Assembly (NCBI GenBank): GCA_002269645.1
Contig: NIVC01004609.1
Location: 1 to 40,633 of the forward strand
Reading direction: 5' to 3'
Length of the DNA stretch: 40,633 bases
Source: Macrostomum lignano
Taxonomy: Eukaryota
In this document: positions 2,001-39,208 of the stretch, piece after piece
Layout: each line of letters starts with the position of its first letter
Numbering within the stretch: the stretch's first letter is position 1
The notes under the pieces: generated by a model
Databases searched by the model: none
What the model was told of the DNA's origin: nothing
What the model saw: only the letters and a program-made list of their open reading frames with translations
Translations under genes and position numbers: made by a program

Positions 2001-3068
2001 TTAAATTGACGACTTCAAGGAAGACGAAGCTCTTGGATACTCGGCGGTCAGCAGCGGCAGAGAAGCCACCAGCCAGCCGCCGCCGTCGCCGCCGTCCACC
2101 AGGCGACTCCAGACGCACCGCCAGGATTCCAATCGGCCGGCCGAGCAGCTGAGCTCCGCCCAGCCCAGCTCCAGCTCTGAGGCCGTCGATTTTCCTTCTT
2201 CAGCGCTGGCGTCGTCGCCGGCGGTGCCGGTCAGCCGGTAGGCGCGCAGTTTGAGCGCGCAAGTGTGCGCCGCGCCATGCGGCATGGCCAGCCGGGCGAT
2301 GTCGCGCCACGAAGCCACTGGCGTCGGCAGACTGGAGGCTGGCGCCGGTTTCCAACGCAGGCGCTGTTGGCGCCGCTGCCGCAGAAGCGCCGGCCGGCTC
2401 CACCAGTCCGCCAGCAGCTCGCCAGTGGCGCGCAGCACCAGCTGCAGGCGGAGCTGCACTCGCTGCGCGGCTTCGCCGCCGTTTCGGCGCCAGAAGCGCA
2501 GCTGCCCGACCGACAGCCGGCCAGACCGACGCCCGATGCGCAGCGCCAGGCGCAGGAGGTCCAGGCCGGCTGCTTCGTCGGCCTCGCTGTCCGCCTCCGC
2601 CGGCGCCTCCAAGTGGCGCCAGAACATGACGCCGTCGCCGCGGAGGCTGCCGGGCGGCAGGCGGCGCAGCGGCACGACAATCCGGCCGAGTAGGCGGCGC
2701 CGAGGCTCGGCGCCAGCGCTGTTGCATTCGTCGCGCACCTCCAGCAGCAGTGCCAGATGCCGCTGATCAGCAGTGAGCAGCGACTCATCGAATTTGTTGA
2801 ACTCGAAGGCCTCCAGCCAGACCGGCCGGTTGGTGAGGATTCGAGCCCGGGTACGCAGCTGGTTGGTCTCGGCCTGGACCGGCAGGAACCGGAGAGTCAC
2901 GTAGGGGCAGAGCTGGCCGTCGTTTGGCTGCAGTCCGACTGCCCTGAGCAGCTTCACCGTGAGCTTCCGCTGCGGCTTTGAGTAGTGAAAGCTGAGCAGC
3001 AGCTTGCCGAGCCCCGCGTCCTCGCCTGTACGGAGCGGCAAAGCTTGAGAATCTGTTGCGGTTGTCAT
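2001..3068 (-). CDS. Synaptotagmin-like tandem C2-domain protein (C2A clear, C2B degenerate), intronless ORF nested antisense in intron 1 of the CUB-LDLa gene
   Basis: 355-aa GC-rich ORF. GKLLLSFHYS...KLTVKLLRAVGL...CPYVTLRFLP...RPVWLEAFEF...LLEVRD...LLGRIVVPLRRL matches the synaptotagmin C2A pattern; the second half has weak C2B-like strands. There is no N-terminal TM in the ORF, so upstream exons are possible. Confidence 0.75.
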   Translation of the reverse strand: MTTATDSQALPLRTGEDAGLGKLLLSFHYSKPQRKLTVKLLRAVGLQPNDGQLCPYVTLRFLPVQAETNQLRTRARILTNRPVWLEAFEFNKFDESLLTADQRHLALLLEVRDECNSAGAEPRRRLLGRIVVPLRRLPPGSLRGDGVMFWRHLEAPAEADSEADEAAGLDLLRLALRIGRRSGRLSVGQLRFWRRNGGEAAQRVQLRLQLVLRATGELLADWWSRPALLRQRRQQRLRWKPAPASSLPTPVASWRDIARLAMPHGAAHTCALKLRAYRLTGTAGDDASAEEGKSTASELELGWAELSCSAGRLESWRCVWSRLVDGGDGGGWLVASLPLLTAEYPRASSSLKSSI

Positions 3069-8469: not shown

Positions 8470-8630
8470 GTGTGAGTGTGTGCCTGTGCGTATGACTTCG
8501 TACGTATCCGCGCGCTTGTGTGCCTGCTCAGGGGAGTCGGTGGAATGGGCTGCAATGCCTCTTGCTGGTTGTGTGAAAATGTCGCTGAAAGTGCACCAAG
8601 GTGCACACAGCCCCTGCCTCTAATGAAAAT
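8470..8630 (+). mobile_element. 5'-truncated copy of the tRNA-derived SINE
   Basis: Near-identical to the 4235-4370 body and ends in CCTGCCTCTAATGAAAA. Confidence 0.75.
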
Positions 8631-10791: not shown

Positions 10792-12040
10792 CTATTGAAG
10801 CTTGGTATGAAAACACGATCTGTAACACTTTAGGATCAGTTGTTTTGTGTAGAACTCTCGCTGGTTGAGTGCAAAAATAATGCATATACAAAGCCTCTGA
10901 TGACTCGGACATCCTGCTCCAGCGTACCAACCAAGCGCGATCATGTTTGCAGCCGTGAGCAGGATGTAGCTGATGAAGCAGATTGCATTCTTGTGACTCG
11001 CTATAAACCTTCCAAGTCTTCTGATCGTTGAGGGCGCATCCGAGGGCGCAGATGAGGGAAGCGCTTTCAGAGCGGAAATGAAGGTGAACGCGATGAGGAT
11101 GAGCATTTGTATCATGAGGAACAGACCGACTAGCGGGATCGTGTTCATGGACTTCGGAGCCGACTGGGACGCGATCAGCACGTATAGAAGAATTATTAGT
11201 CATGGACATGATGATGGCAATGGACAGGTTCACCGGGTCGCTCTTGTCACCAGCCAGGAACATGATGCTTGCGAGCAGCGACAGCAGCTCGAACGGGACA
11301 ATCACCAGCACAGCGTAGTACATCCACCTGCGCTTCAGGTGGAATTGTAAATCCACCATATAAAAGTTGAAGTCAAGTGACTTTTCTTTGGACTGTTCAC
11401 CAGTCACTTTCTCCAGATCCCACTCGCCGACCCGGGAAAGTTCCAGCCCATCGTACGTGGAGCTGTTGTAGTAAACAGACACCGATAGGTTAAAATGCGT
11501 GACGTCGGACGTTCCTGTGCTGACTTGAATAGCGCACAGCTGACTGTCGAAGGGGAAGTATCTCCCATCGATGGCGCATGCGAACTGCACCACTGCGAAT
11601 GTGTAAATGCTAGCTTCTCCGGTTGGAAACAATAGAGCATCGGCGAACATTTCGCCCTTGGAGTTGAGGAACTCGACGTCCGGTAGCCAGAGGCTGTTTC
11701 TGTGGAGACGCAGCTGGTGCGGGCTGCCCGGCGATGACGAGTTCCAGGCGAGTCGAGGGTCAGTCCAGGAAATCCAAATCCAGCCAGAGAACTCCAGCAG
11801 CTCCTTTTCGTCCAGGCCGTAGATGGTGTTCAGATAAATCAACACCCTGACGTCTGTTTGGTAGCCGAAGTAGCTCGGAGACAGCAAGACGTGGCACTGC
11901 GGCAGCGCGTGCGGTCTGATGGACTCCGCCAGTGCGCGGCACGCAGGCACGTCAGCGTTTGTTGCCGGGTCGATGGCGCTTGAGCGCATGATACTGTGAA
12001 CTAGTAGAAGCAGAGGCAGAATACATTTACAGGTTCGCAT
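10792..12040 (-). pseudogene. Cys-loop LGIC-like paralog A; 10-nt insertion in M2 (11189-11198) causes a frameshift
   Basis: Signal peptide, WTDPRLAW, WLPD, C-x13-C loop (CAIDGRYFPFDSQLC), GEW and M1 are present. AGAATTATTA is inserted relative to the other five copies. M3/M4 continue in ORF 10792-11181. There is also an in-frame 7-aa deletion (DLRNTKF) versus B. Confidence 0.85.
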
Positions 12041-12339: not shown

Positions 12340-12760
12340 ATCTCTACCGATAGAAGAGTTCGAACCATGAACTGGGTTGCGACACAATGAGGACTGCGAG
12401 ACCAAAGATCCCTTAGGAGAACAGCTGACCTGCTCAAAGTGCCATGTGGGGAGTAGAAAGTGAAGTTCAGTTACTTTTTAAGTGCAGTTGGAACTTTTAC
12501 TGTATCGTGCTTCTCCGTGATAAACTTGAACAGGAAATCCCAGATAAAGTTCCGAATTAAAAAAACCTTACTGCAGAAGATTAAATATTTTACCTAATGA
12601 CTCAAGAAGACATGATGGAAATGCTACCTAGAAAACTGCATCAAAGACATGACACAAGCTAGAAAGCAACTTCATGAGGCTTCAGATTGTTACAGAAGAA
12701 AACAAGCATGAATAACACGAGATTTCACTCCCGTTAGGTCGAAAAGTATTTTTATTCACT
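12340..12760 (+). mobile_element. Non-LTR retrotransposon (LINE) 3' remnant
   Basis: Clearly homologous to 24115-24490 (e.g. ACAATGAGGA.TGCGAGACCAAAGATCCCTTA; CCGTGATAAACTTGAACAG), which encodes a LINE C-terminal Cys/His motif. Confidence 0.6.
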
Positions 12761-14069: not shown

Positions 14070-15224
14070 TCAGATGTATACAAACACAATAATATTAATG
14101 ATAGTAAGGCTGATGTAGCTTATAAAGCAGACAACATTTTTGTGCTTTGACAGAAACAAAATCAGTTTCTTCAGTTTAGATGGCGCCTCCGAGGTCGCAG
14201 ACGAATAAGTGACTTTTAGAGCAGCGATGAAGGTGAACGCGATGAGGATGAGCATCTGAGCCATGAGGAACAGGCCGACTAGCGGGATCGTGTTCATGGA
14301 CTTCGGAGCCGACTGGGACGCGATCAGCACGTACAGAGTCATGGACATGATGATGGCGATGGACAGGTTCACCGGGTCGCTCTTGTCACCAGCCAGGAAC
14401 ATGATGCTTGCGAGCAGCGACAGCAGCTCGAACGGGACAATCACCAGCACAGCGTAGTACATCCACTTGCGCTTCAGGTGGAACTTGATGTTGGCGACAT
14501 AAAGGCTGTCACCAGCGGCCACATATCGGGAAAGCTCATGAGTAACGCTTATCAGCTCCCACTCGCCGACCTGGTACAAATCCAGGCCCAGGTTCTCTGA
14601 TTTGTTGTAGCTGATAGACACCGACAATTTGAACCCGGAAGTGTCTGACGATATGGTGCCGAGTTGGGTGGCGCACAGCTGAGTGTCGAATGGGAAGTAT
14701 CTCACATCGATGGCGCAGGCAAACTGAACAACTGCGAATGTGTAAATGCCGACTTCCCCAGTAGGAAAAATTACTGCGTCAGTGAACTTGGTGTTTCGGA
14801 GGTCAAACATCTCGCCCTTCGAATTAAGGAAGCCAACGTCTGGTAGCCACACGCTGCCCCGGTCGACTCGCAAGTACTGTGGGCTGCCTGGTGCTGAAGA
14901 ATTCCAGGCCAGCCGAGGGTCAGTCCATGAAATCTGGAACCAAGCGGAGAACTCCAGCAGCTCCTTCTCGTCCAGGCCGTAGATAGTTTTCAGCAAGATG
15001 TGCACGCTGACGTTCGTTTGGTAGCCGAACTGGCTGGGGTACATCAACGTGTGGCACTGCGCCAGCGACTGCGGACCGATGGACTCCGACAGCGCTTGAC
15101 ACGCAGCAGTGGCCGCATCAGTGCTGGCTGCTGAGTTTGACTCTGAAACAGTCGCAAGCAAGAGCAGCACAGGCAGCAGTAATGTTGCTGTTGAAGACAT
15201 TTTGTTGCCACCGGGATGGTTCAT
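14070..15224 (-). CDS. Cys-loop ligand-gated ion channel-like subunit, paralog B (intact, intronless, non-alpha nAChR-like, minimal M3-M4 loop)
   Basis: 384-aa ORF with signal peptide, WTDPRLAW, WLPDV, Cys loop CAIDVRYFPFDTQLC (C-x13-C), VGEW, LKRK pre-M1 and four hydrophobic helices. The P..MNTIPLVG M2-M3 linker is nAChR-like. Confidence 0.93.
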   Translation of the reverse strand: MNHPGGNKMSSTATLLLPVLLLLATVSESNSAASTDAATAACQALSESIGPQSLAQCHTLMYPSQFGYQTNVSVHILLKTIYGLDEKELLEFSAWFQISWTDPRLAWNSSAPGSPQYLRVDRGSVWLPDVGFLNSKGEMFDLRNTKFTDAVIFPTGEVGIYTFAVVQFACAIDVRYFPFDTQLCATQLGTISSDTSGFKLSVSISYNKSENLGLDLYQVGEWELISVTHELSRYVAAGDSLYVANIKFHLKRKWMYYAVLVIVPFELLSLLASIMFLAGDKSDPVNLSIAIIMSMTLYVLIASQSAPKSMNTIPLVGLFLMAQMLILIAFTFIAALKVTYSSATSEAPSKLKKLILFLSKHKNVVCFISYISLTIINIIVFVYI

Positions 15225-15782
15225 ATGCTTATTAACGGTAGATAAGTATTGAACTCAAATATTTGCGTTTGTCGAGCTTTTATCTTGCGTCTTGTGAGAG
15301 TTTTTTGCTTTCCCGAGTTAATTCATGCTAAACTGCTCTGCTCTCAGTGCTATATATGGATAGAGATGAGGGATTAACGCGTTGGTTCTAAACTTTTATT
15401 TGCTGCATTTTCATCTCCACAAGCTTCCTCGAGAGGTTTGGCTTGGTAAAACATTTCCGCATTTCCATTTCAGAGCTGCAGATCTCGCTCTCGTTGTCAA
15501 GGTAAATAATTAACTGCATGCTGGTTGTTCTAGACTAGGGGGGGGGGCACTCAGCTCGTCACGGCTTGTTTCACCCATCAATTAATGACATTTCTATTGG
15601 CAAATAATGAGTCCTTAGTTTTCGCAGTATTTTTTAGTCTGCTGAGTACATCTATCTCCATGAACATTAAAGGACGATTCTCTATGGAATAGCCTTTTTT
15701 TCGCAGTTGCAAACCAGTTTTGCCCAATTGTCCAAATATATGGAGAATATGATTACATTGGATCAAATTCTGTTAATTCCCG

Positions 15783-16126
15783 ATAGTCAGTGGGCCGTAG
15801 CCTGGCCCGTGTCAGCGGTCCAGGTTCGATTCCAAGTGCAGTCACATTAATTTGGGGCTAAATTGGAATCGCGGCTTGGCTCTGCTCGTGCAATTAACGG
15901 CCTTGAGGGCCGACCCCAAGGCACAGTGAAGTGTACATGCCTAACGATAAATAAAGTTAGGGCCGCTGTACACTCCTGTGTGAGTGTGTGCCTGCGCGTA
16001 TGACTGTGTACGTATCCGCGCTTGTGTGCCTGCTCAGGGGAGTCGGCGGAATGGGCAGCAATGCCTCTCGCCGGTTGTGTGACAATGTCACTTAGGTGCA
16101 CACAGCGCCTGCCTCTAATAAAAATG
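15783..16126 (+). mobile_element. tRNA-derived SINE copy with a different head/middle but the same 3' body
   Basis: TAGTCAGTGG A-box-like element, GGTTCGATTCC B-box (15823-15833), and a shared body at 15970-16126 ending CCTGCCTCTAATAAAAA. Confidence 0.7.
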
Positions 16127-16449
16127 TTCCCAATAGTGGATAGTGGATTGAACTGAGTCTTCCCTTTGGGGACAGGCGGGGCTGGTGTATGTTCATGTTA
16201 TGTTAGTATAAATGACACGAGATATGAATTATGAACGGCGACAGAAAAGAGTTCCGGGCTTAACGATGAAGATCTGCTCAGGATGGCGCAGAGCTCATTC
16301 TCTCGTCATATATGATCCCAGTGTCTTAGCAATATTTGCACTGGCATCGGGTTCTGCTCTCAAGACACTAAATGCTACTGTCACAGTGTTCTTAGGACGA
16401 GTCTATTTGCCAAGTTTGGTTATGTCCAAATAACAGCTGTGTTGCGGCA

Positions 16450-17690
16450 GCCATCCGATCAAAAGAAATGCTCCGTTTGAATGGAGATGTCTTGTCAGGT
16501 CTGGTTAAAGTTCTTCAAGCAAAGACTATTGACAACTATAAAGAATTACTTGTTGAAAGGAGTACTTTTCTGTTCACTCACTGAACTCAATGCATACTTA
16601 TCTTCTACGCAATTTCCACTAGCTTTTACGGGATCACCTGCATTACAACTCATCATCTACTTTCCTACTTTTGCCGATATAAACTTAAAAGTATCAACTG
16701 AAAAGACGTGTTCCCAAGCCAAAACGTGTACACTCAAAGTGGCCGATTTTTTAAAGCTTTCTACTCATTTGGTGAGTAGTATGGATTTAAAATTCAGAGC
16801 AAGTGCCGCTCATATGAACCCAGTCATCATGCAGTGCGTCTTCGCTTTTCTATAGCTTTTTTCAAACCTGATTAATTATTTACGTCGCCCGAATAGGTAA
16901 AATATAAAGATTGCTATACACTGTAATTGATCGTATTACTCATTAAAGGTATTGCTCTATTGCCCACAGTGCCACCTGTTGAAGGTACCGACAGCGTCGG
17001 GGTGATGACGGAATTCTGGAGAGACTAGCTGAGGATGTCCAGCAGTTGAGGCTTGCCTACTGCCGAGGCTTGATCAGCGAACTCAGAGAAACTTGCACAG
17101 GGTGTCCATAGTCACCGGGTGCCACCCTGGAAGGATCCGCCTGAGTAAAGACCAGTGACCAAAGAAGTCAGAGCTGATGCAGAGATGTGCTGGTGAAATT
17201 TGGAGGCTTGGCAAGGCTGCGCTGAGGCGCAGCGCTGGTTGGCGCACAGGGCTGTATTGAATGCACTGGCGCTTATGAATATCTCGATGGTCCGGAGGGT
17301 TGGTGACTTGATTATCGTTTGCGAAGGTGCGCAAGAAAAAGTTAGCCGATGGTCTTGACTTTTGACGCAGCAAAAACTCTTACGGCTCTTACGGCTTGTA
17401 CATCTATTTCCACTGGATTCTGTTGCTAAGGTCCAAGCATAGCGCTCGTAATTTTTAATCCATTTACCATATGCCAATTATTCAATGTGCTGGTCAACAG
17501 TCAGCCTCATCCATAGCAGACTGCGCCAAAGCAAACCTACTGGTCAAACATGCAGCAGTTTTCAAACACACGCCCACAGACTACAGGGCCAGATCACATG
17601 TTACAAACATCAGAGCCACCAAGCTGAACAAGTGGGCAGAAGCTGAACTACTGTTAGATGATTTTCTACGGCAAACTTAATGAATAATGT
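16450..17690 (+). mobile_element. Possible highly degenerate LINE RT/C-terminal remnant
   Basis: Fragmentary motifs only: NLKVSTEKT (RT-like), VTGCHPG, and CAGQQSASSIADC (C-terminal Cys-motif-like), with many stops. Confidence 0.25.
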
Positions 17691-17744
17691 GACAAATAGG
17701 AAATTTAAATATTTGACCAGCGAGCACTGTGAATATAATTATAG

Positions 17745-18538
17745 CAGGGGTTGGCAAACCTTTTAACGTCAAGGGCCAGATAGAGAACCCAGAGACTGAC
17801 TGTGGGCCCGGAGGAGGGGAGAGAGGAGAGGAAATAAAGAAGAGAGAAGGGAGGTAAGAGAAAGGAGAGGTGAGATAATAAAGGAGAAGAGAGGAGTGGA
17901 GAAGGAGGAGAGAGAAAAGAGAGGAGAGGAGGAGAGAAAATGAGTGAGAAGAGAGGAGAGAGAGGAGAGAGAAGAGAGGAGAGAGAAGAGAGGAGAGAGA
18001 AGAGGAGAGGAGGAGAGGAGATGAGGAAGGGAGGAGAGGAGATGAGGAGAGGAGGAGAGGAGATGAGAAGAGAGGAGAAGAGAGAAGATGAGAGGAGAGA
18101 GGAGAGGGAAGACGAGACGAGAGGAGAGGAGAGAGGAGAGAAGATATGATAGAGAAGAGAAGAGAGGTGGGGAGAGATGAGAGGAGAGAGAAGAGAACAT
18201 AGGAGAGAGGAAGAGAGTAGAGAGGAGATTAGAGAGAAGAGTGCTGAGAAGCGATATAAACATTGGGTGGGCCGGATTGCTTGTGGGCCGGATTGCTTGT
18301 GACGGATTTCTTGATTGCTTGTGGGCCGGATTGCTTGTGACGGATTTCTTGATTGCTTGTGGGCCGGATTGCTTGTGACGGATTTCTTGATTGCTTGTGA
18401 GCCGGATTGCTTGTGACGGATTGCTTGATTGCTTGTGGGCCGGATGCAGCACATTGTAAAGTTTCAAAGGACCCGAGGGTCGGATAGAGAGGCTCTGCGG
18501 GCCGCATGTTGCCCGACATGCAGAGTTTGCCGACCCTG
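17745..18538. mobile_element. hAT/Charlie-type non-autonomous DNA transposon (MITE) with internal GA microsatellite and 38-bp tandem repeats
   Basis: Left end CAGGGGTTGGCAAAC (17745) and right end GTTTGCCGACCCTG (18525-18538) form imperfect TIRs. Subterminal GGGCCG(G/C)A motifs are present. No intact 8-bp TSD is visible. Confidence 0.7.
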
Positions 18539-18636
18539 CATGAATTAGAGACTGGGAGAGTAATGGCTGGCGTACGTGCTTGTCATCAAGCAGAAAACCA
18601 GAATGAAAGTCTTCAGCTTCATTTAGCTTCAGCTTC

Positions 18637-19781
18637 ATGTCTTCACTGGCGCAACTCCGGATTCTTCTGAGCCACGCAGTCTTGCTGGTATCAGCCAGCA
18701 CTGAATGGGCTGCCGACGCTGAAGTGGCCGCCTGTCGCGCTCTGTCGGAGTCCATCGGTGCGCAGTCGCGTCAAGCTGTCACCGAAGCACTGTGGCTACG
18801 ATACAAATATTGAGTTGTTGTCTTGATGCTCCATGTGAAGACTATATATACATGTACGGCCAGGACGAGAAGGAGCTGGAGGAGTTCACCGGCTGGATTC
18901 AGATGACCTGGACTGACCCCCCGGCTAGCCTGGAGCTCAACGGAAAGTCCACTGAAGCAGCTACGGGTGGAGAGGAACAGCTTGTGGTTGCCGGATGCTG
19001 GATTCTGGAATACGCGGGAAAGCTGAGAGCTTTATGACGCACGAAATGCAAAGTTCCAGGACGCCACAATGTTCCCCACTGGTAAGGGTAAGATCTATAT
19101 CTTCTTTGTAGTCCGATTTGCCTGCATCATACAAGTCGCCAAGTTTCCATTCGACGCGCAAGTCTGCTCAAGTTTCCAAGTCTGCTCCATTCAAATCGGC
19201 ACGATATCTTCGGACTTGACGGTGTTCAATATTACAGTGCAAAATATATTTAAAGAGAATATTGATTCGGTACAGTCTTCGTCAACTGTCAGTGAATGGG
19301 ACTTGAAAAATATTTCTCAAACGGACATGATCGACTCTATTGGTGGGCAGCAATTCAAAAGTGTGAGGCTTCTCCTTCAACTGGAGCGAAGGTTCATGTA
19401 TTATTGGTGATTGTCTCGTTCCAGCTGCTGTCGCTGCTCGCAAGCATCATGTTCCTGGCTGGTGACAAGAGCGACTCGGTGAACCTGTCCATCGCCATCA
19501 TCATGTCCATGACTCTGTACGTGCTGATCGCGTCCCAGTCGGCTCCGAAGTCCATCCTCATCGCGTTCACCTTCATCGCAGCCGCTCAGAACAAAACAGA
19601 TAGATCAGCTGCTCACAAACCGGAGGCTGAGCATAGAAAGCGAGGCTGGAAGACAGTTCTATTGCAACACAGAAACGTGGCTGCTACATTGCAGCAAGTG
19701 TCTGCAATGCATGCGCATTTTTGTTTATATCACCAAGTAGCTATTAAGGACAATTTTAACTCCAAAACTTTCTGCAATTAG
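18637..19781 (+). pseudogene. Cys-loop LGIC-like paralog C, degraded pseudogene
   Basis: ATG 18637 MSSLAQLRILLSHAVLLV...AACRALSESIG; then YGQDEKELEEFTGWIQMTWTDP, FACIIQVAKFPFDAQVC, SEWDL and the pore cassette lie in several frames, with multiple frameshifts and stops. A 48-nt deletion removes MNTIPLVGLFLMAQML. Confidence 0.88.
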
Positions 19782-20602
19782 TGGTGAATGTTTCAATGAG
19801 AAATCATGGTGACAGAATTTTGCAAAACAAATGCTTCAACTCAGTCAACTCAATCTTTGAAGTTTGGAAATAATTTTTCGAATGCACGACTCCAATGGCT
19901 TATTTATACTTTAGCTAATATGCTCGTAGTTAGCGCGCATCTCATTTGTACTGTTTCTTAACTTAGTACAAAGTCGAATAAAGCATTAACTAACTAATAT
20001 TGCAATAATACACGTTTTACTGATACGACCCCCATTAGTAAAATAACTAATTCATGCAAGGACCCGTCAGAACCTGCTGCATGTTTTCTTATGTAACAGA
20101 TAAAGTTTATTTGTTCACGTAAAATGGTAAAGAGCTGCTTGTTAATTTGCAGCAGTTTTTTAGATCAAAATAGATCAAGATCAAAATACTATACTGTAAT
20201 TGCAAACTTTGATTGGTTGATCGGACACGTGGGCCATATTGGAACAATTGAAACAATATAACATGCAAAGAACCAGCTATTACAGCACAGCGATGACAAT
20301 CAACGTAGGTAGGATTTACTGCACGCGGTGCATACTCTCGTAGTGTTGTATTTTTGGGTAAATGAACGAACCGAGAATTCAATTGTCGGTGCAATCAAGC
20401 TTAAATTGTAGTGGTATAGTAGTACTCGTAGTAGTTGACGGCACAGTAGCAAATACTTGCTAAATGGCTGAGAGTTCCTCAATAGTACTATTTCAAGTCA
20501 AACAGTTCCTAAAAAAGTGAATATCGATATCCGATCTCACTTTTGTCAGAAATTGACAAACTTTTTGCTCTATTTAAGAAAAAATCGTGGCTAAGAGTGC
20601 AG

Positions 20603-21752
20603 CTACTTATCGGCGCTCAGGTGGGCGGGCCAGACATAGATGAAAACGAGCGCGTTCACCCCGCTGAGCAGCAGGTAGGCGCAGCTGCACACAACAGCCC
20701 GGTGGCGAAACAAGAAGGTCCAGCAGCTTTTCGTCACCTTTGCACTTTCACGACTCGCAACCTGCTGTCTGCCAGGGAAAGCAGCGATGAAGGTGAACGC
20801 GATGAGGATGAGCATCTGAGCCATGAGGAACAGACCGACTAGCGGGATCGTGTTCATGGACTTCGGAGCCGACTGGGACGCGATCAGCACGTACAGAGTC
20901 ATGGACATGATGATGGCGATGGACAGGTTCACCGGGTCGCTCTTGTCACCAGCCAGGAACATGATGCTTGCGAGCAGCGACAGCAGCTCGAACGGGAAAA
21001 TCACCAGCACAGCGTAGTACATCCACCTGCGCTTCAGGTGGAACTGGATGTTGACTACCGGGTAGATAGCGCCATTTGCAGTAAGAAAGTATGAGTTATG
21101 ATCAACAGACTGCAGGATCCATTCGCCAACTTGGTACAGCTCGAGTCCACTGTCTTCCGAGTAGTTGTAGCTCACCCTTGCCGAAAAGTTGAGTGCAGCT
21201 ACGTCAGATGTAACTGTAGCCAGTTGGGTTGCGCAAACCTGGCTGTCAAACGGGAAGGATCTCACATCAAGGGCGCATGCGAATTGGACAACGCAAAATG
21301 CGTAAATAAACGCTTCTCCTGATGCACTAAGAACTACGTCAGAGAATTTCGCGTTTCTAATGTCGAACATCTCGCCCTTGGAATTCAGAAAGCCGATGTC
21401 AGGAAGCCACAGACTGTTCCTGTCGATGCGCATGTACCGTGGACTGCCTCTAGCTGATGAGTTCCAGGCCAGCCGAGGGTCGGTCCATGCCAGCTCAATC
21501 CAGGCAGAGAACTCCAGCAGCTCCTTGTCGTCCAGACCGTAGATGGTCTTCAGTAGAATTTTAACAGCGACGCTGTTTTCGTAGCCGAAATGGCTCGGCG
21601 ACAGCATGACGTGGCACTGCGGCAGCGACTGCGGTCCGATGGACTCGGCCAGTGAGCGGCACGCGGCTACGTTGACGTTCGAGGCCGGATCGATGGTGGC
21701 TCAGAAAACAGTGCAACAGAATGAATCTGGCTGGCTGAATCAGGTGCTGCAT
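20603..21752 (-). CDS. Cys-loop LGIC-like paralog D; signal peptide (ATG 21752) is out of frame with the open 366-codon main frame 21700-20603 (pseudogene or sequencing error)
   Basis: The main frame has ACRSLAESIGPQSLPQCH, WTDPRLAW, CALDVRSFPFDSQVC, GEW and M1-M4. There is an in-frame TGA at 21701-21703, and MQHLIQPARFILLHCFLS lies in the adjacent frame. Confidence 0.8.
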
Positions 21753-22328
21753 TCTACAGTAAGTATCTTCAGAACGTCTGACAATTGGATTTCTCTAAAT
21801 GGATCGAATGCAAAGCTGCTGGGAAGTGGGAAGCTTCGGTAGCTTTAAACGGTGACAAATATAGTTAAGAGTTTGCCGCCCAGCAGATTCGCACCAATCA
21901 GGAAACTTTGCCCTCCTCATCTTCTATTCAGTGCTTCGCTTTTATCAAGCGTTCTTAATATGCTACTTAACTTAAACCATAAAAGTAGCTTCATCACTCT
22001 TCACCACTTGCATTGCTACTAATAGTAGTAGAAACTATTGTTTCAAAACTGTTCTACAGCGTATTGTACAAAAAATTAAAGCCTTCCATATTGCGAAAAT
22101 CCCATTTAAAGTGAGTTATAAGCTATACAACTTGAAGATTTGAGATTGGCTCTAACCTCCTTTGCTAGATAGAAAGAAAAAGGATGCTGGATAGTTTTTG
22201 CGTCAACTGGCTTCGCAGCGAATCAGAGCTAACGAATTTATACGAATAAAAATCAGGTCTCAAGGCAAGGAAACTCCAAGGTTATAAATTTTTTTAAAGT
22301 CGTGGATATTCAGTAACAAATCGTAGCC

Positions 22329-23488
22329 ATGCTCACCTGTCTTAGGTCTGTAATCTTTCGACTGTTGCTGGTAATGGGGAGCAGCGCTTTTTTACGCTTG
22401 ATCGCCATCAGTCCAGCCTCCAACGCAGACAAGGCAGCATGCCGGGCTCTGGCGGAGTCCATCGGGCCGCAGTCGCTGCCGCAGTGCCACGTCATACTGT
22501 CTCCCAAAAACTTTGGCTACAATACGAACGTCGAGATAGTCATATCGATCAAGACCATTTACGGACTGGGAGAGAACAAGCTGCTGGAGTGGTCCGGTTG
22601 GACCTTCATCAGCTGGACTGACCCAAGACTGGCTCGGAACGTATCCGAAAGCCAATTGGATCAACTGCGAGTGGAGCGGAACAGCCTGTGGCTGCCAGAC
22701 ATTGGCTTCTGGAACAGCAAGGAGGAGAGCTTGTACGACATTCGAAATTCTGGCCTCTTGGAAGTGACGGTATTTCCCTCCGGCCTCGTGTACGCCTACG
22801 TGTACCTGGTGATTCGGTCTGCATGCGCAGTTGACATCAGACTATTTCCATTTGATCAGCAGCTTTGCACTATAGAGTTGGGAACCATCACTTCTGACTC
22901 GAGTGTCTTCAATTACACACTCTTAAGCACCTTATCGATCAACAAGATAGACGGAGTGTCCTACCAAGTTGGGGAGTGGAATTTGAACGAGCTATCGCAG
23001 CACAATCGCACTAATGTTATTAATGGTCAATCGTTTCCTTGCACCGAGATCAAGTTCCACCTGACGCGCAGGTGGATGTACTACGCTGTGCTGGTGATTG
23101 TCCCGTTCGAGCTGCTGTCGCTGCTCGCAAGCATCATGTTCCTGGCTGGTGACAAGAGCGACCCGGTGAACCTGTCCATCGCCATCATCATGTCCATGAC
23201 TCTGTACGTGCTGATCGCGTCCCAGTCGCTCCGAAGTCCATGAACACGATCCCGCTAGTCGGTCTGTTCCTCATGGCTCAGATGCTCATCCTCATCGCGT
23301 TCACCTTCCTGACCGTTGTTTCTCCAAGGCAATCAAGGCGAAGTGAACGAAGCCCTAAGATCTTTTTCGACTGCGTTGAGTTCTGTATTAAACAGAAAAA
23401 TAGTATTTGTTTTATCAGCTACCTTGTTGTCAGTGGACTTAACGCAGCAGTGTTTCTGTTTCTTCTACCATATCAAGACAGAAAATAA
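22329..23488 (+). CDS. Cys-loop LGIC-like paralog E; 1-nt deletion at ~23228 (GG to G) splits the ORF (sequencing error or recent pseudogene)
   Basis: ORF 22329-23243 has signal, ECD with CAVDIRLFPFDQQLC, M1 and M2; ORF 23240-23488 has M3 and M4. E reads CAGTCGCTCCG where the other copies read CAGTCGGCTCCG. Confidence 0.85.
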
Positions 23489-23699
23489 GATAACGAGAAT
23501 GATTAATATCAAAGATTTGGTTTGGCAACAAAATAAATTTGACCATCTTTAAATTTAAACGATAGATCTTGTGCACTTGTTAATCTAATCACGAAGAGGC
23601 CCATAGATGCCCACGTAGTTTCATAATGCTTTTAGAAGTATTAGTTGGCCTTGGAATAACTCACTCTAGTACAGTCGAAGTTGAAAGCATGTTCTTGAC

Positions 23700-24490
23700 G
23701 CCTCTGAGGCCTGGGGGCTGTTGTTTTCTAGAACCTGGGCTCGAAGTCTAATCGAGAGGATCAATTTCAGATCTTGCAAATCATTCTCCAAGGCTGACTG
23801 CAATACCCAAAATTGAATTATTCAGTACCGGGCCTCACTAGCAAATCACTCAGACTCCATCATCTCGAGACAGTGAGGTTGGCATTACAGCTAAAATGAA
23901 TACTGAAATAATGCGAAATTTTCAAAATGGACGAGTAACGAAATCAATCAGAACACACAAAGCTACTCGAAGTAGTTTTGAACTAGAATTTACGAGGCAC
24001 TGAAAGCAAAGAGTAGAGAACTCTGAAAATTTAACTCACTACTCAGCCGAAAAGCGTCCTAGAAATTTGCAATCCAGAATTGAAGCGCACCCTGTCACAG
24101 TTTAGATTAGCAAACCATAAACTGGCCTGCGAAACAATGAGGATTGCGAGACCAAAGATCCCTTACGAGAACAGGACCTGCCCAAAGTGCCATATGGGGG
24201 GTAGAATGTGAAGTTCACTTCCTGTTTAAGTGCTGTTGGAACTTTTTAGTGGCTCCCCGTGATAAACTTGAACAGTTGAAAGTCTCGGATAAAGTTTCGG
24301 ATTTTAGAAACCATACGGCAGAAGAAAAAGTATTTTACCGAATGACTCAAGTAGATAGAGGCATAATGGAAATTTTTGCAAGATTATCAAAGACAAGCTA
24401 GAATGCAACTGCCCTGAGGCTTCAGATTGCCTTGATAAGAGTACTTTGTGCACTAGACTTCACTCCCCCGTTACGTCCAGAAAAATTATT
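23700..24490 (+). mobile_element. Non-LTR retrotransposon (LINE) 3' remnant
   Basis: Translates (with shifts) EAWG...IERINFRSCK and PELKRTLSQFRLANHKLACETMR...PYENRTCPKCHM-GVECEVHFLFKC, the typical FR...H.L..E...R.C..C...E.E.HFL..C C-terminal motif of LINE ORF2. Confidence 0.7.
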
Positions 24491-25271
24491 GACTGCTTTT
24501 TGCATTCATTATTTCGTTGTATTTTGCAACTCAACGGTTTCACTACAAGTTGGACACACAAAGCAGCTCAATATTTGCCAATTGCATCCATGGATTTCTG
24601 AGAATGTTTGCTGCAGACAACGCTAGGCTAATGTTTAACAATCCACTTTCAGAATTAATCAATAAATGTATTTGTCGCTATACAGTCCAATTTATATTGT
24701 TGGCGAAGACCCCAGCTGTTCAGTGGTGAAATTCATAAAGAATTGCATCTCAAGATATTTACACTTGCACTAATCATTTGCTAGCTAAGCCGCCTTTAAT
24801 GTGTTGATTAAATTGAATTGAACTGTGTTGTCTGGCACTCTAGCAGCTTCATCAGTGAGTGCAGTTTCTATGGCGGCTGCTTAAATATTTAGTCACGCAG
24901 TTGCTAAGCCATTATTTGCTCGAGAAGCAACAAGTGTACTTCTGTTATTTGCTTTTTGTCAAGCGTTCGGTTATTACTGATAATCAAATTTAACACGAAT
25001 GCAAAATAGCTATCAGCAAGTCAAAACCCGTTGCAATAAAGAATAATTTTATTTGAGAAACTACGAAAACATGATAACTTTTCAGAGTCGCTTTACTTTG
25101 AAGGAGGGTTACCATATTGAATTCAATGTTTGTAGAACGTCAATTATATATACTCTATTCTATGCGAATAATCCCAGCACTATCAATGTGCCATCTTTCC
25201 CAAACATAAAGCCGTAAAATTATTTGTGCATCTGCTCAAGCTGAAAGGCCAAATAATTAAAAGTTAGGGGG

Positions 25272-25386
25272 TTACGTATCAGATTAAACATGCCTTTTGA
25301 GGGAGTTATTTGTATAAATCACGAGGGCCTGAGGCCCGAGGGATTTATGAAAATAACTCCCGAAAAAGGCATGTGTAATCTCGTAT
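25272..25386. repeat. Imperfect palindrome with ~40-bp arms and a GGGCC-TGA-GGCCC centre
   Basis: 25281-25320 (AGATTAAACATGCCTTTTGAGGGAGTTATTTGTATAAATC) versus the reverse complement of 25342-25381 (AGATTACACATGCCTTTTTCGGGAGTTATTTTCATAAATC). Confidence 0.9.
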
Positions 25387-25389
25387 AAA

Positions 25390-25485
25390 CCATAGACATA
25401 AAGACTTGACGGGATATTATTGAATATTACCAAATAAAATCCCGGGGAACGCAAATATTGTCACGGAAAGTCTTTATTTCTATGG
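25390..25485. mobile_element. 96-bp mini element with 16-bp TIRs CCATAGA(C/A)ATAAAGAC
   Basis: CCATAGACATAAAGAC (25390-25405) and GTCTTTATTTCTATGG (25470-25485) match at 15/16 positions in inverted orientation. Confidence 0.55.
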
Positions 25486-25625
25486 ATTATGAAAAATTTT
25501 TGTGTCGTGATGTCTGTGTTATACATCTTAAGAATCCGTCTTGCAGTGATTAAACGACTCAATGAAACTTTCTGAGATGCCAAGGCTCATGGCTACTCAT
25601 GCGAAAGTAAATAACAGCAACGCTC

Positions 25626-26807
25626 TTAAGAGTCCAAATGAGGCCATAAAACCAAAAACGCGACAGAGTTTAGTCCGCTAGTCGACAGGTACAGAAATAA
25701 GAGGACTAGGTTCCTTTTTCCGTCAAGACCCTGCCAGTATTGGCTCAAAGTTGAGCTCGTCCCCTCATTGAAATTTATCAAACGCTTTTGATCGACGGCC
25801 GCAATGAAAGTGAAAACGATGAGAATGAGCATTTGTATCATGAGGAACAGACCGACTAGCGGGATCGTATTCATGGACTTCGGAGCCGACTGGGACGCGA
25901 TCAGCACGTACAGAGTCATGGACATGATGATGGCGATGGACAGGTTCACCGGGTCGCTCTTGTCACCAGCCAGGAACATGATGCTTGCGAGCAGCGACAG
26001 CAGCTCGAACGGGACAATCACCAGCACAGCGTAGTACATCCACTTGCGCTTCAGGTGAATGTTTATTTTGTGAAAGGGAAAGCTCTCTTCAATACTGTGC
26101 AATACAGCCTGTTCTTGCTTAACTCCCTCCAGCTCCCATTCACCGACACCGAACAGTCCGATGTCATTGCTCATGAGACGGGCAGACAGCGATATGTTTA
26201 ACTCGTCCGAATATGACACAACCGTGCCGACTCCAACTGAACAGACCTGCCGGTCGAAAGGAAACTTTCGCACATTCAGGACGCATCCAAACTTTATCAC
26301 CAGGTAAATCGGAAGAACCACCGTTCCCGTGCTGTACACTGAAACCGAAATAAATTTCGAATTACGGAGATCAAACATATCGTTGTCCTTTCCATTCCAG
26401 AAACCAATGTCCGGCAGCCAGAGACTGTCTCTGTCGATAACTAGATGGTCTACGGCCTTGTCGGACGAGTTCCAGGCCAGCCGAGGGTCGGTCCACGTCA
26501 GATCAATCCATGCGGACCACTCCAACAGCTCCTTCTCGTCCAAGCCGTACACAGCCATCAATTCGATTGTAACCGAGACGCTGGTGTCGTAGCCGAAACT
26601 CTTTGGCGATAGTATCGCGTGACACTGCGGCAGCGACTGCGGCCCGATGGACTCCGCCAGTGCGCGGCACGCGGCCACGTCAGCATTGGCTGCCGAGTCG
26701 ATGGCGGCCGAGTGGGTAGCTGCGCTGGCTACCAGAAGCAGCACAGCTGACAGTGGCAACTGTCCAATGCAGCTCTGCCATGCTGCTGGAAGGGAAATTA
26801 GTAACAA
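25626..26807 (-). CDS. Cys-loop LGIC-like paralog F; open frame intact from signal peptide to M4, but no in-frame ATG before the signal peptide
   Basis: 393-codon frame (TTG start in the ORF track) with ACRALAESIGPQSLPQCH, WTDPRLAW, CVLNVRKFPFDRQVC, GEW and M1-M4. A strong 3' splice site ends at 26786/26783, and an out-of-frame ATG sits at 26781. Confidence 0.85.
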   Translation of the reverse strand: MLLISLPAAWQSCIGQLPLSAVLLLVASAATHSAAIDSAANADVAACRALAESIGPQSLPQCHAILSPKSFGYDTSVSVTIELMAVYGLDEKELLEWSAWIDLTWTDPRLAWNSSDKAVDHLVIDRDSLWLPDIGFWNGKDNDMFDLRNSKFISVSVYSTGTVVLPIYLVIKFGCVLNVRKFPFDRQVCSVGVGTVVSYSDELNISLSARLMSNDIGLFGVGEWELEGVKQEQAVLHSIEESFPFHKINIHLKRKWMYYAVLVIVPFELLSLLASIMFLAGDKSDPVNLSIAIIMSMTLYVLIASQSAPKSMNTIPLVGLFLMIQMLILIVFTFIAAVDQKRLINFNEGTSSTLSQYWQGLDGKRNLVLLFLYLSTSGLNSVAFLVLWPHLDS

Positions 26808-32588: not shown

Positions 32589-32631
32589 CTGCAATTGGGA
32601 ATTGATGAATTTCGCCTTGCAACTGTGAGCA

Positions 32632-33322
32632 TCCTCTACTGAGCATCCTCTCTACTGAGCATCCTCTCTACTGAGCATCCTCTCTACTGAGCATCCTCTC
32701 TACTGAGCATCCTCTCTACTGAGCATCCTCTCTACTCTCTACTGAGCATCCTCTCTACTGAGCATCCTCTCTACTGAGCATCCTCTCTACTGAGCATCCT
32801 CTCTACTGAGCATCCTCTCTACTGAGCATCCTCTCTACTGAGCATCCTCTCTACTGAGCATCCTCTCTACTGAGCATCCTCTCTACTGAGCATCCTCTCT
32901 ACTGAGCATCCTCTCTACTGAGCATCCTCTCTACTGAGCATCCTCTCTACTGAGCATCATCTCTCTACTGAGCATCCTCTCTACTGAGCATCCTCTCTAT
33001 CATCCTCTTACTGAGTATCATCTCTACTGAGTATCATCTCTACTGAGTATCATCTCTACTGAGTATCATCTCTACTGAGTATCATCTTTACTGAGTATCA
33101 TCTCTACTGAGTATCATCTTTACTATCATCTTTACTGAGTATCATCTCTACTGAGTATCATCTTTACTGAGTATCATCTCTACTGAGTATCATCTCTACT
33201 GAGTATCATCTCTACTGAGTATCATCTCTACTGAGTATCATCTCTACTGAGTATCATCTCTACTGAGTATCATCTTTACTATCATCTTTACTCAGCATCA
33301 TCTCTATTGAGTATCATCTCTA
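32632..33322. repeat. 16-bp minisatellite (ACTGAGCATCCTCTCT)n grading into (ACTGAGTATCATCTCT)n
   Basis: 16-nt period with a variant switch near 33000. Confidence 0.96.
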
Positions 33323-33685
33323 CTAAGTATTATCCTTAATAAATTCAAATCCCATGTACTTACAGCTAGAAAGATTAATATGTCTTAAAAAGTACTTATA
33401 GCAAATTATATAAAAAAGACAGGCAAAACATTGTAAGGCAACAACCAGGTCTCTTAATACGAGCTAATAGATCAACTATATAATTTTCGCATACAAAGAG
33501 TGCAAATTTTCGCGGAAAAATGCAGATCTCCTACTACATTTAAGAGCATAACTAAATGCTCAAAATATTGGTTGGTATGTAGTGTTAGACTCGTTTCTGT
33601 CTGTCACAATTGTTCTTAATATCTCCAGCTGAAATTTCTATAAACATGCGAGTATTCCCTATCTTTTAAAACACTGTGCACTTGC

Positions 33686-34063: not shown

Positions 34064-34451
34064 TCACAAGGCCTCTCGGCGGTTTTGCCTAGCCTTGGCC
34101 TGCTGCAGGAACTGGCCGTACTCGGAGGTCATGCCCTTGGCCTGCTGGCTCAACCGATTCGCTTCGTCGACGTCAGTCGGTCCGCCGTCGCCTCGCCGCA
34201 TCATGACGGCCAACAGGCCGCAGCCGGCTCCGTCGCCGGCGTCGCACGCGGTGCCGGCCAGTTTGCGGGCCTCGGCAGCCTGGCCGGCCTGAAGGCATTC
34301 AACAGCAGCGCTGACGCAGGCGAGGCCGACGCCGTCGCGATCGCCGGGACCGAGGCAGGCGCGGCGGAGCAGAGCCATGCCGGCTTCCAAGCTGCCCGCG
34401 CTGCGGCCGCCGTCCAATAGACGGGAGCGGGCCAGGCAAATACAGGAGCGC
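34064..34451 (-). CDS. COA7: COA7-like Sel1-repeat protein, exon 2
   Basis: Acceptor CCGCAG|34451 (phase 2). Reads RSCICLAR...MALLRRAC...ACVSAA...RKLAGTACDAGDGAGCGLLAVMMRRGDGGPTDVDEANRLSQQAK, matching the COA7 C-terminal ACD.G...AC.....M...GDG...D...A pattern. Confidence 0.75.
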
Positions 34452-35020: not shown

Positions 35021-35259
35021 GTGTCTCAAGTGTCATAATCTCTGTCTGTCTCAGTGTCTCAAGTGCCCTAGTGTCTGTGTGTCTCTGTCTTAAGTGTTCC
35101 AGTGTCTCAGTGTTTCAATATCTGCCTGACTCGGTGTCTCAGCTCAAAGTCCCTATGTATCATTGTGTAAGTGGCTGTTTATGTACAAGTGTCTGACTAC
35201 GCCTTAGTCTCAATAATCTCAATGTCTCTATGCCTCAGCCAGCCAGCAGACCTACGCAC

Positions 35260-35672
35260 CGATGCAGCAGCCGGTTGCAGGCCCGGTCATAATAAGCATT
35301 AGCCTCGGCCGGGTCGCAGTCCGGATGCGCTGGAGCCCCAACCGGATGGCCATGCGGCCCGTTCCGCTTATAGTTGGCGTACTTGAAGCAGCTCTCCGCG
35401 TGGCCGTGAAGATCGCAGTTGTGCTTGAACACGGCCGCGCCCTCGGCTGGCTGCTTCCGCCACATGGATAGCCACTGGCCGAGTGAGTGACAGGCGTCCT
35501 TGTTACCGTCCTGGTAGCAGGCGTAGCTGAACTGGAAGCCCCGTTCGCGCATCTGTTCAACTAGTTCAGACTCCGTCTTTAGCTCCATCAGGCCGTGATC
35601 GGGGTTGGCAGGATCGTAATCGGCCGCAGCCTCCAATATTGGGTCATCATCTTCTTCCGGCTTCTTCGACAT
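35260..35672 (-). CDS. COA7: COA7-like Sel1-repeat protein, exon 1
   Basis: ATG 35672. LMELKTESELVEQMRERGFQFSYACYQDGNKDACHSLGQWLSMWRKQPAEGAAVFKHNCDLHGHAESCFKYANY aligns by eye with human COA7 (...ECNYHCYHEKDPDGCYRL...[24 protein letters not shown]). Donor CG|GTGCGT is phase 2 and matches exon 2. The spliced CDS is 801 nt. Confidence 0.8.
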
Positions 35673-35755
35673 TGCCTGATGGCGAAGTCGCAGAAGTTTT
35701 GCCGATTGGCCGAATACACAGCAATGAAGAATATGTAGGGACAGACGGAATAAAT

Positions 35756-38700: not shown

Positions 38701-39208
38701 CAAGTTGGTGAAATGGCAGGTTGGTGAAACGGCAAGTTGGTGAAATGGCAGGTTGATGAAATGGCAAGTTGGTGAAATGGCAGGTTGGTGAAATGGCAGG
38801 TTGGTGAAATGGCAGGTTGGTGAAATGGCAGGTTGGTGAATTGGCATGCTAGTGAAATGGCAAGTTGGTGAAATGGCAGGTTGGTGAAATGGCAGGTTGG
38901 TGAAATGGCATGTTGGTGAAATGGCAGGTTGGTGAAATGGCATGTTGGTGAAATGGCAGGTTGGTGAAATGGCAAGTTGGTGAAATGGCAAGTTGGTGAA
39001 ATGGCAGGTTGGTGAAATGGCAGGTTGGTGAATTGGCATGCTAGTGAAATGGCAAGTTGGTGAAATGGCAGGTTGGTGAAATGGCAGGTTGGTGAAATGG
39101 CATGTTGGTGAAATGGCAGGTTGGTGAAATGGCATGTTGGTGAAATGGCAGGTTGGTGAAATGGCAAGTTGGTGAAATGGCAAGTTGGTGAAATGGCAGG
39201 TTGGTGAA
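35756..39208. repeat. ~3.45-kb 16-bp satellite (GGTTGGTGAAATGGCA)n, ~215 copies with variants
   Basis: 16-nt period; recurring variants (ATGCTAGT, AAGTT, CAGTTT) form higher-order blocks. Confidence 0.98.

What the first reader, a model, noticed from the sequence alone, without database searches (positions are those of the whole stretch)
14226..26058. Constant-region architecture: a ~220-265 bp M1-M3 pore cassette is nearly nucleotide-identical across paralogs whose ligand-binding domains and M4 tails diverge strongly
Seen: the segment from LKR(R/K)WMYY to AFTF differs by only ~3 nt between B (14226-14482) and D (~20786-21046), and by ~2 nt over ~220 nt between B and F (25839-26058), synonymous sites included. 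Immediately flanking ECD (loops E/F/C) and M3-M4/M4 sequence is so divergent that many residues differ. Even pseudogene C and broken copy A keep the cassette. Identity at silent sites cannot come from protein selection alone. Inference: localized gene conversion homogenises the pore/assembly module while the sensor module diversifies, a variable/constant design that could let any subunit co-assemble into one pore type.
Basis: partly seen in the sequence, partly recalled or inferred. Interest (0 to 1): 0.88.

Follow-up and report, generated by a model that had tools for sequence, protein, structure and literature searches.

The report
Gene-converted pore cassette in channel paralogs
Six neighbouring copies of a flatworm-type ligand-gated ion-channel gene share an almost identical 256-bp stretch encoding the pore helices M1-M3 while the rest of each gene has diverged to saturation, a clear but conceptually familiar case of local gene conversion.

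Summary
Six intronless Cys-loop receptor paralogs (A-F, 10.7-26.8 kb) share a 256-bp segment that encodes pre-M1 through M3. It is 93-100% identical in DNA, while the flanking ECD and the M3-M4/M4 tail are about 45-75% identical. Synonymous divergence is 0-0.14 in the cassette but 0.8 to saturated on both sides (Fisher P 4e-9 to 7e-24).

Protein constraint and codon bias do not explain this:
- Conserved ECD motifs in the same genes keep pS at 0.6-0.8.
- A nematode tandem array with 93% identical M2-M3 peptides has only 82% DNA identity.
- The degraded pseudogene C also carries the cassette core.

Several features fit repeated short-tract interlocus gene conversion: differences cluster at the cassette edges, the four-gamete test fails inside the cassette, the cassette tree conflicts with the ECD tree, and GC3 is raised.

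The "variable/constant design for co-assembly" is not: only B is unambiguously intact, the other five carry lesions or an unresolved start, and no positive selection on the ECD is shown. The same pattern is known from protocadherin clusters and TLR1/TLR6, so this is a new member of a known kind. Read-level verification and a sister-species comparison were not possible.

The parts
10792..12040 (-). Copy A: pLGIC paralog. The ECD frame is open, and a 10-nt insertion (11189-11198) in M2 shifts the frame. The tail is open in the shifted frame.
11078..11343 (-). Cassette A (pre-M1 to M3). It is 93% identical to B including the 10-nt insertion, and shares the ATACAA variant with F.
14070..15224 (-). 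Copy B: the only unambiguously intact gene. It has a 384-aa ORF with an ATG, a signal peptide, the LBD, the Cys-loop CAIDVRYFPFDTQLC, and M1-M4.
14227..14482 (-). Cassette B (residues ~248-332, FHLKR...FTF): the end of beta10 plus M1, M2 and M3.
15045..15088 (-). Second, weaker island of reduced silent divergence at the mature N-terminus (SESIGPQSLxQCH). Pairwise identity is 35-41 of 44 nt and pS is 0.18.
18661..19703 (+). Copy C: degraded pseudogene with several frameshifts and stops in the ECD.
19376..19576 (+). Cassette C. The 5' 28 nt have decayed. There is a 7-nt deletion at 19403/19404 and a 48-nt deletion at 19552/19553. The ~149-nt core between the deletions is 98% identical to the other copies.
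20603..21752 (-). Copy D. The ORF is open from 21700, with an in-frame TGA at 21701-21703. The upstream ATG at 21752 is in another frame, so there is an apparent lesion in the signal-peptide region.
20787..21042 (-). Cassette D: 3 differences from B.
22329..23488 (+). Copy E: intact except for a 1-nt deletion between 23227 and 23228 in the M2-M3 linker. The tail is open in the shifted frame.
23056..23310 (+). Cassette E: synonymous distance to D is 0.
25626..26807 (-). Copy F: uninterrupted 393-codon frame from the signal-peptide core to the stop, but no in-frame ATG (the ATG at 26781 is out of frame). The start is unresolved.
25804..26059 (-). Cassette F. It differs from B at only 3 sites over the first ~220 nt. 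Its private differences cluster in the 3' ~66 nt.

Best explanation
The region is a cluster of six tandem and inverted, single-exon paralogs of a divergent, nAChR-related pentameric ligand-gated ion-channel subunit family. The nearest relatives are flatworm proteins, with Macrostomum lignano closest. The paralogs are old: silent sites in the ECD and the tail are saturated. A 256-bp segment encoding the last residues of beta10 plus M1, M2 and M3 is kept 93-100% identical by repeated short-tract interlocus (non-allelic) gene conversion within the ~15-kb cluster. Inferred step: stronger protein constraint on M1-M3 slowed its divergence, leaving it the only stretch similar enough for heteroduplex formation, after which conversion became self-sustaining. 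On this view the indel-rich loop C/pre-M1 region and the M3-M4 linker act as heterology barriers, which fixes the boundaries at the domain edges. The process is mechanical rather than selected, because it also converts pseudogenes. It is probably GC-biased.
For: 1. dS is 0-0.14 in the cassette, 0.8 to saturated in the ECD, and saturated in the tail, with Fisher P from 4e-9 to 7e-24.
2. Internal control: third-position identity at identical residues is 0.59 in the ECD, 0.96 in the cassette and 0.49 in the tail. The invariant WTDPRLAWN and Cys-loop motifs keep pS at 0.6-0.8.
3. External control: in the Mesorhabditis tandem pLGIC array the M2-M3 peptides are 93% identical, but the DNA is 82% identical and third positions 0.60.
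4. Codon bias alone predicts ~0.68 codon identity, against 0.96 observed.
5. Pseudogene C, whose ECD is riddled with frameshifts, has a 149-nt core that is 98% identical.
6. Variable sites cluster at the cassette edges (13/3/11 by thirds, P=0.008). There are four-gamete violations (site 1143 against 1359-1364, and site 1129 against 1143). A groups with F in the cassette but with B and D in the ECD.
7. Cassette GC3 is 0.81-0.89, against 0.62-0.69 in the ECD. Deviations from the majority base are 25 S>W against 4 W>S.
8. Across species the cassette peptide is at most 47% identical, and the closest relative's M1 start is ~65% identical, so M1-M3 is not intrinsically invariant.
9. No Rfam family matches and there is no excess RNA structure (z=+0.91).
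Against: Everything rests on one assembly, with no reads, population data or orthologous cluster available. The 5' boundary is shared to within a codon by five copies, which is sharper than random tract endpoints would give and so needs the heterology-barrier argument, which is an inference. Part of the GC3 excess may simply be TM codon composition: a relative (L002) has TM1-3 GC3 of 0.59 against 0.47 in its ECD. Unique frame-breaking indels persist in three cassettes that are otherwise homogenised, which is slightly odd if conversion is frequent. A GENECONV-style test restricted to polymorphic sites has little power here, because all copies are homogenised together.
Confidence: 0.8

Rival explanations
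1. Unequal crossing-over or chimeric gene formation. Here the breakpoints of non-allelic crossovers within the cassette, rather than non-reciprocal conversion, spread one cassette and shuffled ECDs against tails.
For: The copies lie in both orientations (A-, B-, C+, D-, E+, F-), consistent with past inversions between inverted repeats. The tail tree is largely unresolved.
Against: A and B are sisters in both the ECD and the tail, so there was no exchange between them even though their cassettes differ in mosaic fashion. Edge-clustered differences and internal four-gamete violations indicate several short tracts. Crossover cannot homogenise an internal block and leave both flanks diverged in all six copies.
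Confidence: 0.08
2. Assembly or polishing artefact: multi-mapped reads homogenised cassettes that truly differ.
For: The central core is the most uniform part, which is also where multi-mapping would be worst. The single-nucleotide indels in E and D could be sequencing errors.
Against: Each cassette keeps private substitutions and indels, and its flanks are unique. A 256-bp block lies within one read length of a unique flank. Reads could only cross-map if the true copies were already at least ~90% identical, so an artefact could exaggerate the island but not create it against 45-75% flanks.
Confidence: 0.04
3. Nucleotide-level purifying selection on a DNA or RNA element embedded in the cassette, for example a shared small-RNA target or a co-regulation element.
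For: Silent sites are conserved. Inverted cassette pairs (C/D and D/E) could form dsRNA if co-transcribed.
Against: No Rfam family matches. The fold z-score is +0.91. Three copies tolerate 1-48-nt indels inside the cassette. The pseudogene is homogenised too. The mosaic variant sharing is typical of recombination.
Confidence: 0.04
4. Protein-level constraint on M1-M3 combined with extreme codon bias.
For: Codon usage in the cassette is strongly biased (TTC 6/6, ATC 8/9, CCG 4/4). TM1-3 GC3 is somewhat raised in a relative.
Against: Codon identity expected from the cassette's own usage is 0.68, against 0.96 observed. The Mesorhabditis control and the ECD-motif control show that constraint leaves silent sites free. 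Cross-species peptide identity is at most 47%. Pseudogene C is included.
Confidence: 0.02

Closest known systems
Regional gene conversion in clustered protocadherin variable exons (fugu and zebrafish; PMC1852091, which cites Noonan et al. 2004)
   Same: Tandem neuronal-receptor paralogs have one coding region over 99% identical at the nucleotide level, silent sites included, next to divergent recognition domains. GC3 is raised in the homogenised part, and the homogenisation is lineage-specific.
   Different: There the homogenised part is EC4-EC6 and the 3' end of large variable exons, within a locus that also has true spliced constant exons. Here the homogenised part is an internal 256-bp block (M1-M3) with divergence on both sides, in stand-alone single-exon ion-channel genes, most of which are damaged.
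TLR1/TLR6 domain-restricted gene conversion (PMC2077338)
   Same: Conversion limits the divergence of the transmembrane and signalling part while the ligand-binding part diverges. Tract limits recur at nearly the same positions.
   Different: That case involves two functional genes and was shown independently in nine mammals. This one involves six copies in a single genome, includes pseudogenes, and has no cross-species confirmation.
Flatworm nAChR-like pLGIC subunits with an acidic Asp at M2 -1' (schistosome SDR/GDR channels, PMC9874803; Fasciola THD26242.1; Macrostomum lignano A0A1I8I4U5)
   Same: The fold is the same, with a Cys-loop FPFD motif and an Asp at the -1' position (SDP here). The M2-M3 motif SQ(S/T)APKSM is shared with relatives from Logan assemblies.
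   Different: The window proteins are only 44-50% (ECD) and at most 47% (TMD) identical to any known protein. They lack the loop-C Cys pair and the Trp-B of ACh-binding alpha subunits. The M3-M4 linker is very short.
Mesorhabditis spiculigera tandem pLGIC array (CAJ0574943.1; locus L001)
   Same: It is a tandem array of pLGIC units with near-identical M2-M3 peptides and more divergent ECDs.
   Different: There is no nucleotide homogenisation: DNA identity is 82% and third-position identity 0.60. That is constraint without conversion, so it serves as the negative control.

Membership tests
Pentameric ligand-gated ion channel (Cys-loop receptor) superfamily | Extracellular Neur_chan_LBD beta-sandwich domain | tested here: met
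   Pfam PF02931 scores E 3e-32 (B), 5e-29 (F) and 5e-28 (D). The alpha7 nAChR structure sequence matches at E 7e-34 over residues 78-337. The AF2 model shows beta strands across residues 71-252.
Pentameric ligand-gated ion channel (Cys-loop receptor) superfamily | Cys-loop: two Cys 13 residues apart with an FPFD motif | tested here: met
   B has CAIDVRYFPFDTQLC. The motif is conserved in A, D, E and F.
Pentameric ligand-gated ion channel (Cys-loop receptor) superfamily | Four transmembrane helices, with M1-M3 contiguous and M4 C-terminal | tested here: met
   The AF2 model has helices at 254-277, 284-305, 313-335 and 362-383 (pLDDT only ~70). M1-M3 align to alpha7. Pfam Neur_chan_memb scores only 21-25 bits, below its 28.1-bit cut-off.
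Pentameric ligand-gated ion channel (Cys-loop receptor) superfamily | Pentameric assembly and ligand-gated current | not testable with these tools
   This needs expression and electrophysiology.
Nicotinic acetylcholine receptor, ACh-binding (alpha-type) subunit | Loop-C vicinal Cys pair and a conserved Trp in loop B | tested here: not met
   In the alpha7 alignment the YECC region aligns to SRYVAAG, which has no CC, and the loop-B Trp aligns to Ile. The ligand is therefore unknown, and I do not file this as an ACh-binding subunit.
Domain-restricted concerted evolution by interlocus gene conversion | A segment is far more similar between paralogs than its flanks, including at synonymous sites | tested here: met
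Domain-restricted concerted evolution by interlocus gene conversion | Mosaic or incongruent history: recombination signal inside the segment, and a segment tree that differs from the flank tree | tested here: met
   There are four-gamete violations, and A groups with F in the cassette against (A,B),D in the ECD. The number of informative sites is small (6).
Domain-restricted concerted evolution by interlocus gene conversion | Independence from protein function: pseudogenes are converted | tested here: met
   The core of pseudogene C is 98% identical although its ECD is degraded.
Domain-restricted concerted evolution by interlocus gene conversion | GC3 enrichment of the converted tract (biased gene conversion) | tested here: inconclusive
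   GC3 is 0.81-0.89 against 0.62-0.69, and deviations are 25 S>W against 4 W>S. However, a relative with no evidence of conversion also shows a smaller TM excess (0.59 against 0.47).
Domain-restricted concerted evolution by interlocus gene conversion | In the segment only, paralogs within a species are more alike than orthologs between species | not testable with these tools
   No orthologous cluster could be retrieved. The only partial hint is that M. lignano P0070 has an ECD as close as the deep paralogs (44-50%), while its M1 start is only ~65% identical.

The most novel reading that the evidence does not exclude
The homogeneity is adaptive rather than a by-product. On this reading, selection favours conversion that keeps every subunit's pore, gate and TM packing surface identical, so that differently tuned extracellular domains can be combined freely in heteropentamers. 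That would be an antibody-like variable/constant architecture in an ion-channel family, possibly with the damaged copies serving as sequence donors. An alternative version is that the shared 256-nt block is used for family-wide RNA-level co-regulation.
Probability: 0.1. Interest if true: 0.7.

Novelty: new member of a known kind. Interest (0 to 1): 0.38.

Why it matters
This is a very clean natural example of an internal, domain-sized conversion island: silent-site divergence drops from saturation to about zero within a codon. It occurs in a receptor class for which I found no such report in the held literature.

In practice it warns that trees, orthology calls and selection scans on flatworm pLGIC families must exclude the TMD, and that short-read assemblies will break or collapse at this block.

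It also flags an unannotated, lineage-specific orphan pLGIC family, with Asp at -1' and no ACh-binding signature, in a free-living flatworm lineage related to parasites for which such channels are drug targets (PMC9874803).

It does not establish a new mechanism.

Tried and rejected
1. A GENECONV-style permutation test on polymorphic sites only gave weak P values, because all copies are homogenised together and the cassette columns drop out as monomorphic. I replaced it with all-column run tests and synonymous contingency tests.
2. A word-indexed protein search with the cassette peptide found nothing. The same search with a family alignment was swamped by generic pLGIC hits. Neither gave orthologous clusters.
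3. An exact-match scan of metagenome contigs for the cassette core gave 0 hits.
4. Rfam scanning of the whole window gave 0 families, and the RNA fold of the cassette gave z=+0.91, so an RNA-element explanation was rejected.
5. I examined the Mesorhabditis array (L001) as a possible second example. It turned out not to be homogenised at the DNA level and was used as a control.
6. I considered SL trans-splicing or an upstream exon to rescue F's missing ATG, because there is an acceptor-like ttcccttccag around 26790. The frames do not fit for the two candidate AG sites, so this is left unresolved (the SL-supplied-ATG idea comes from my own knowledge).
7. The organism was not identified directly. 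The flatworm (macrostomid-like) assignment is an inference from the best hit.
Full report
**What is there**

A self-BLAST and a six-way alignment show six copies of one gene between 10.7 and 26.8 kb: A(-), B(-), C(+), D(-), E(+) and F(-). tblastn finds no further copy in the window.

Each copy is a single uninterrupted coding block. A relative from another species is also a single 1164-nt ORF (L002).

Pfam finds the neurotransmitter-gated channel ligand-binding domain at E 1e-28 to 1e-32, with a sub-threshold hit to the membrane domain. The best solved-structure relative is the alpha7 nicotinic receptor, E 7e-34. An AlphaFold model of B (pLDDT 70) has the beta-sandwich followed by helices at 254-277, 284-305, 313-335 and 362-383. 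The Cys-loop is canonical (CAIDVRYFPFDTQLC).

The loop-C Cys pair and the loop-B Trp of ACh-binding subunits are absent, and the M2 -1' residue is Asp (SDP against GEK). These are therefore orphan, probably cation-selective pLGIC subunits. Selectivity is an inference from the acidic -1' residue, as discussed for schistosome channels in PMC9874803.

**Gene status**

- B is intact (384 aa).
- F has an open frame from the signal-peptide core to the stop, but no in-frame ATG.
- D has an in-frame TGA at 21701-21703, and its upstream ATG is in another frame.
- A has a 10-nt insertion (11189-11198) in M2.
- E lacks one base between 23227 and 23228.
- C has many ECD frameshifts, plus 7-nt and 48-nt deletions in the cassette.

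The single-base lesions could be assembly errors.

**Checking the observation**

The block runs from TTCCACCTGAAGCGC (FHLKR) to TTCACCTTC (FTF), at B 14482-14227. Mean pairwise identity is 0.96-0.99 in the block, against ~0.45 in the adjacent windows on both sides.

- B and D differ at 3 of 257 positions.
- B and E differ at 3 positions plus one gap.
- B and F differ at 3 positions in the first ~220 nt and at about 10 overall.
- A is 93% identical to B including its insertion.
- C retains a 98% identical core.

The longest identical run for every one of the 15 pairs lies in the block (59-208 nt), against a maximum of 26-44 nt in 2000 shuffles.

Nei-Gojobori dS is 0-0.14 in the cassette, 0.8 to more than 2 in the ECD, and saturated in the tail. 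Fisher P for synonymous differences ranges from 4e-9 to 7e-24.

**Why it is not protein constraint or codon bias**

- In the same genes, the invariant WTDPRLAWN and Cys-loop motifs have pN of about 0.17-0.25, but pS stays at 0.6-0.8.
- Third-position identity at residues that are identical in a pair is 0.59 in the ECD, 0.96 in the cassette and 0.49 in the tail.
- A tandem pLGIC array in the nematode Mesorhabditis spiculigera (L001) has M2-M3 peptides that are 93% identical, but its DNA is only 82% identical and its third positions 0.60.
- Drawing codons from the cassette's own biased usage predicts 0.68 identity, not 0.96.
- Across species, M1-M3 is no better conserved than the rest. The best match to the cassette peptide among 150 representatives from a 1.84-billion-protein library is 41-47% identical, and a word search of 5.8 billion proteins finds no copy.
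- The nearest relative is M. lignano A0A1I8I4U5. Its ECD is as close as the window's deeper paralogs (44-50% against 48-52%), but its M1 start is only ~65% identical.

**Why it is gene conversion**

Pseudogene C has a wrecked ECD, yet its cassette core between its two deletions is 98% identical to the other copies. The 28 nt upstream of the 7-nt deletion have decayed to ~68% identity.

Within the cassette, the 27 substitution-variable columns fall 13/3/11 across thirds (P=0.008). This is what is expected if the centre is covered by more conversion tracts than the edges.

The informative sites are mosaic. B and F share A at column 1143, while A and F share the linked ATACAA variant at columns 1359-1364. 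That gives all four gametes, and the ECD tree is ((A,B),D),(F,(E,C)).

Cassette GC3 is 0.81-0.89, against 0.62-0.69 in the ECD and 0.39-0.69 in the tail. Deviations from the majority base are 25 strong-to-weak against 4 weak-to-strong. This fits GC-biased conversion, although a relative shows a smaller TM-associated GC3 excess, so I rate this line as suggestive only.

No Rfam family matches and there is no excess RNA structure.

**Boundaries**

The block equals the end of beta10 plus M1-M3. Both edges abut indel-rich, unalignable sequence: loop C/pre-M1 on one side and the M3-M4 linker on the other.

My reading, which is an inference, has three steps. Stronger constraint on M1-M3 kept it above the homology threshold for heteroduplex formation. 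Conversion then locked it in. The flanking heterology stops tracts at the domain edges, so no design is needed.

**Artefact**

Each cassette carries private substitutions and indels, and each has unique flanks. Cross-mapping of reads could only exaggerate an island that already exists, not create one. This cannot be fully excluded without reads.

**Comparison with known systems and verdict**

The pattern and the arguments (silent-site identity, GC3) match regional gene conversion in teleost protocadherin clusters (PMC1852091) and TLR1/TLR6 (PMC2077338). I found no report of it for pLGICs.

I therefore file it as a new member of a known kind. The co-assembly 'design' is speculative, and it is weakened by the fact that one copy of six is clearly intact and that a dead copy is converted too. 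Interest is moderate.

Noticed in passing
window 15045-15088 (B) and the homologous positions in A, D, E and F (for example E 22453-22496): There is a second, much shorter island of reduced silent divergence at the mature N-terminus (SESIGPQSLxQCH). Pairwise identity is 35-41 of 44 nt and pS is 0.18, against 0.5-0.8 nearby. It may be a second, weaker conversion tract.
   Followed up: partly
window 11189-11198 (A), 23227/23228 (E), 19403/19404 and 19552/19553 (C): In A and E the only frame-breaking lesions lie inside the 256-bp cassette, and C has two more there. Indels are over-represented relative to substitutions in the block. This could be recombination-associated mutagenesis or assembly error.
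   Followed up: partly
window 19404-19552: Pseudogene C's homogenised core is bounded exactly by its own 7-nt and 48-nt deletions. Sequence 5' of the 7-nt deletion has decayed, as if the indel acts as a heterology barrier to conversion.
   Followed up: partly
window 403-1987, 32626-33324, 35752-39209, plus about 12 other arrays: Tandem repeats cover roughly 27% of the window. They include three different 16-bp satellites (99, 44 and 216 copies) and many 11-81-bp minisatellites. Several create long spurious ORFs.
   Followed up: partly
window 26781-26807: Copy F has a good signal-peptide core, but its only nearby ATG is one base out of frame. An acceptor-like ttcccttccag lies just upstream, so an upstream exon or trans-splicing is possible but unresolved.
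   Followed up: partly
window 2001-3068 (-): A GC-rich (58%) 355-aa ORF with a C2 domain (Pfam E 3e-9) looks like an unrelated neighbouring gene. ORFs at 34064-34417 and 35235-35963 (-) look like exons of a Cys/His-rich protein but have no Pfam hit.
   Followed up: partly
window 12363-12689 vs 24113-24429, and 8470-8630 vs 15978-16125: Interspersed repeats at 78-84% identity lie between the receptor copies. They are probably transposon fragments and were not characterised.
   Followed up: no
L001 (Mesorhabditis spiculigera CATQJA010002634.1, 332212-362893): At least nine tandem pLGIC units have been merged by the annotators into two multi-domain gene models (512 and 1215 aa). The M2-M3 peptide is nearly invariant but the DNA has diverged.
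   Followed up: partly
proteins P0070, P0219 and P0220 (Macrostomum lignano UniRef entries): All three closest relatives are gene models of 271-273 aa that stop inside M1 (…LLPFEM), at the position where the window's cassette begins. This may be an assembly or annotation break at a repeated TM block in that genome too.
   Followed up: no
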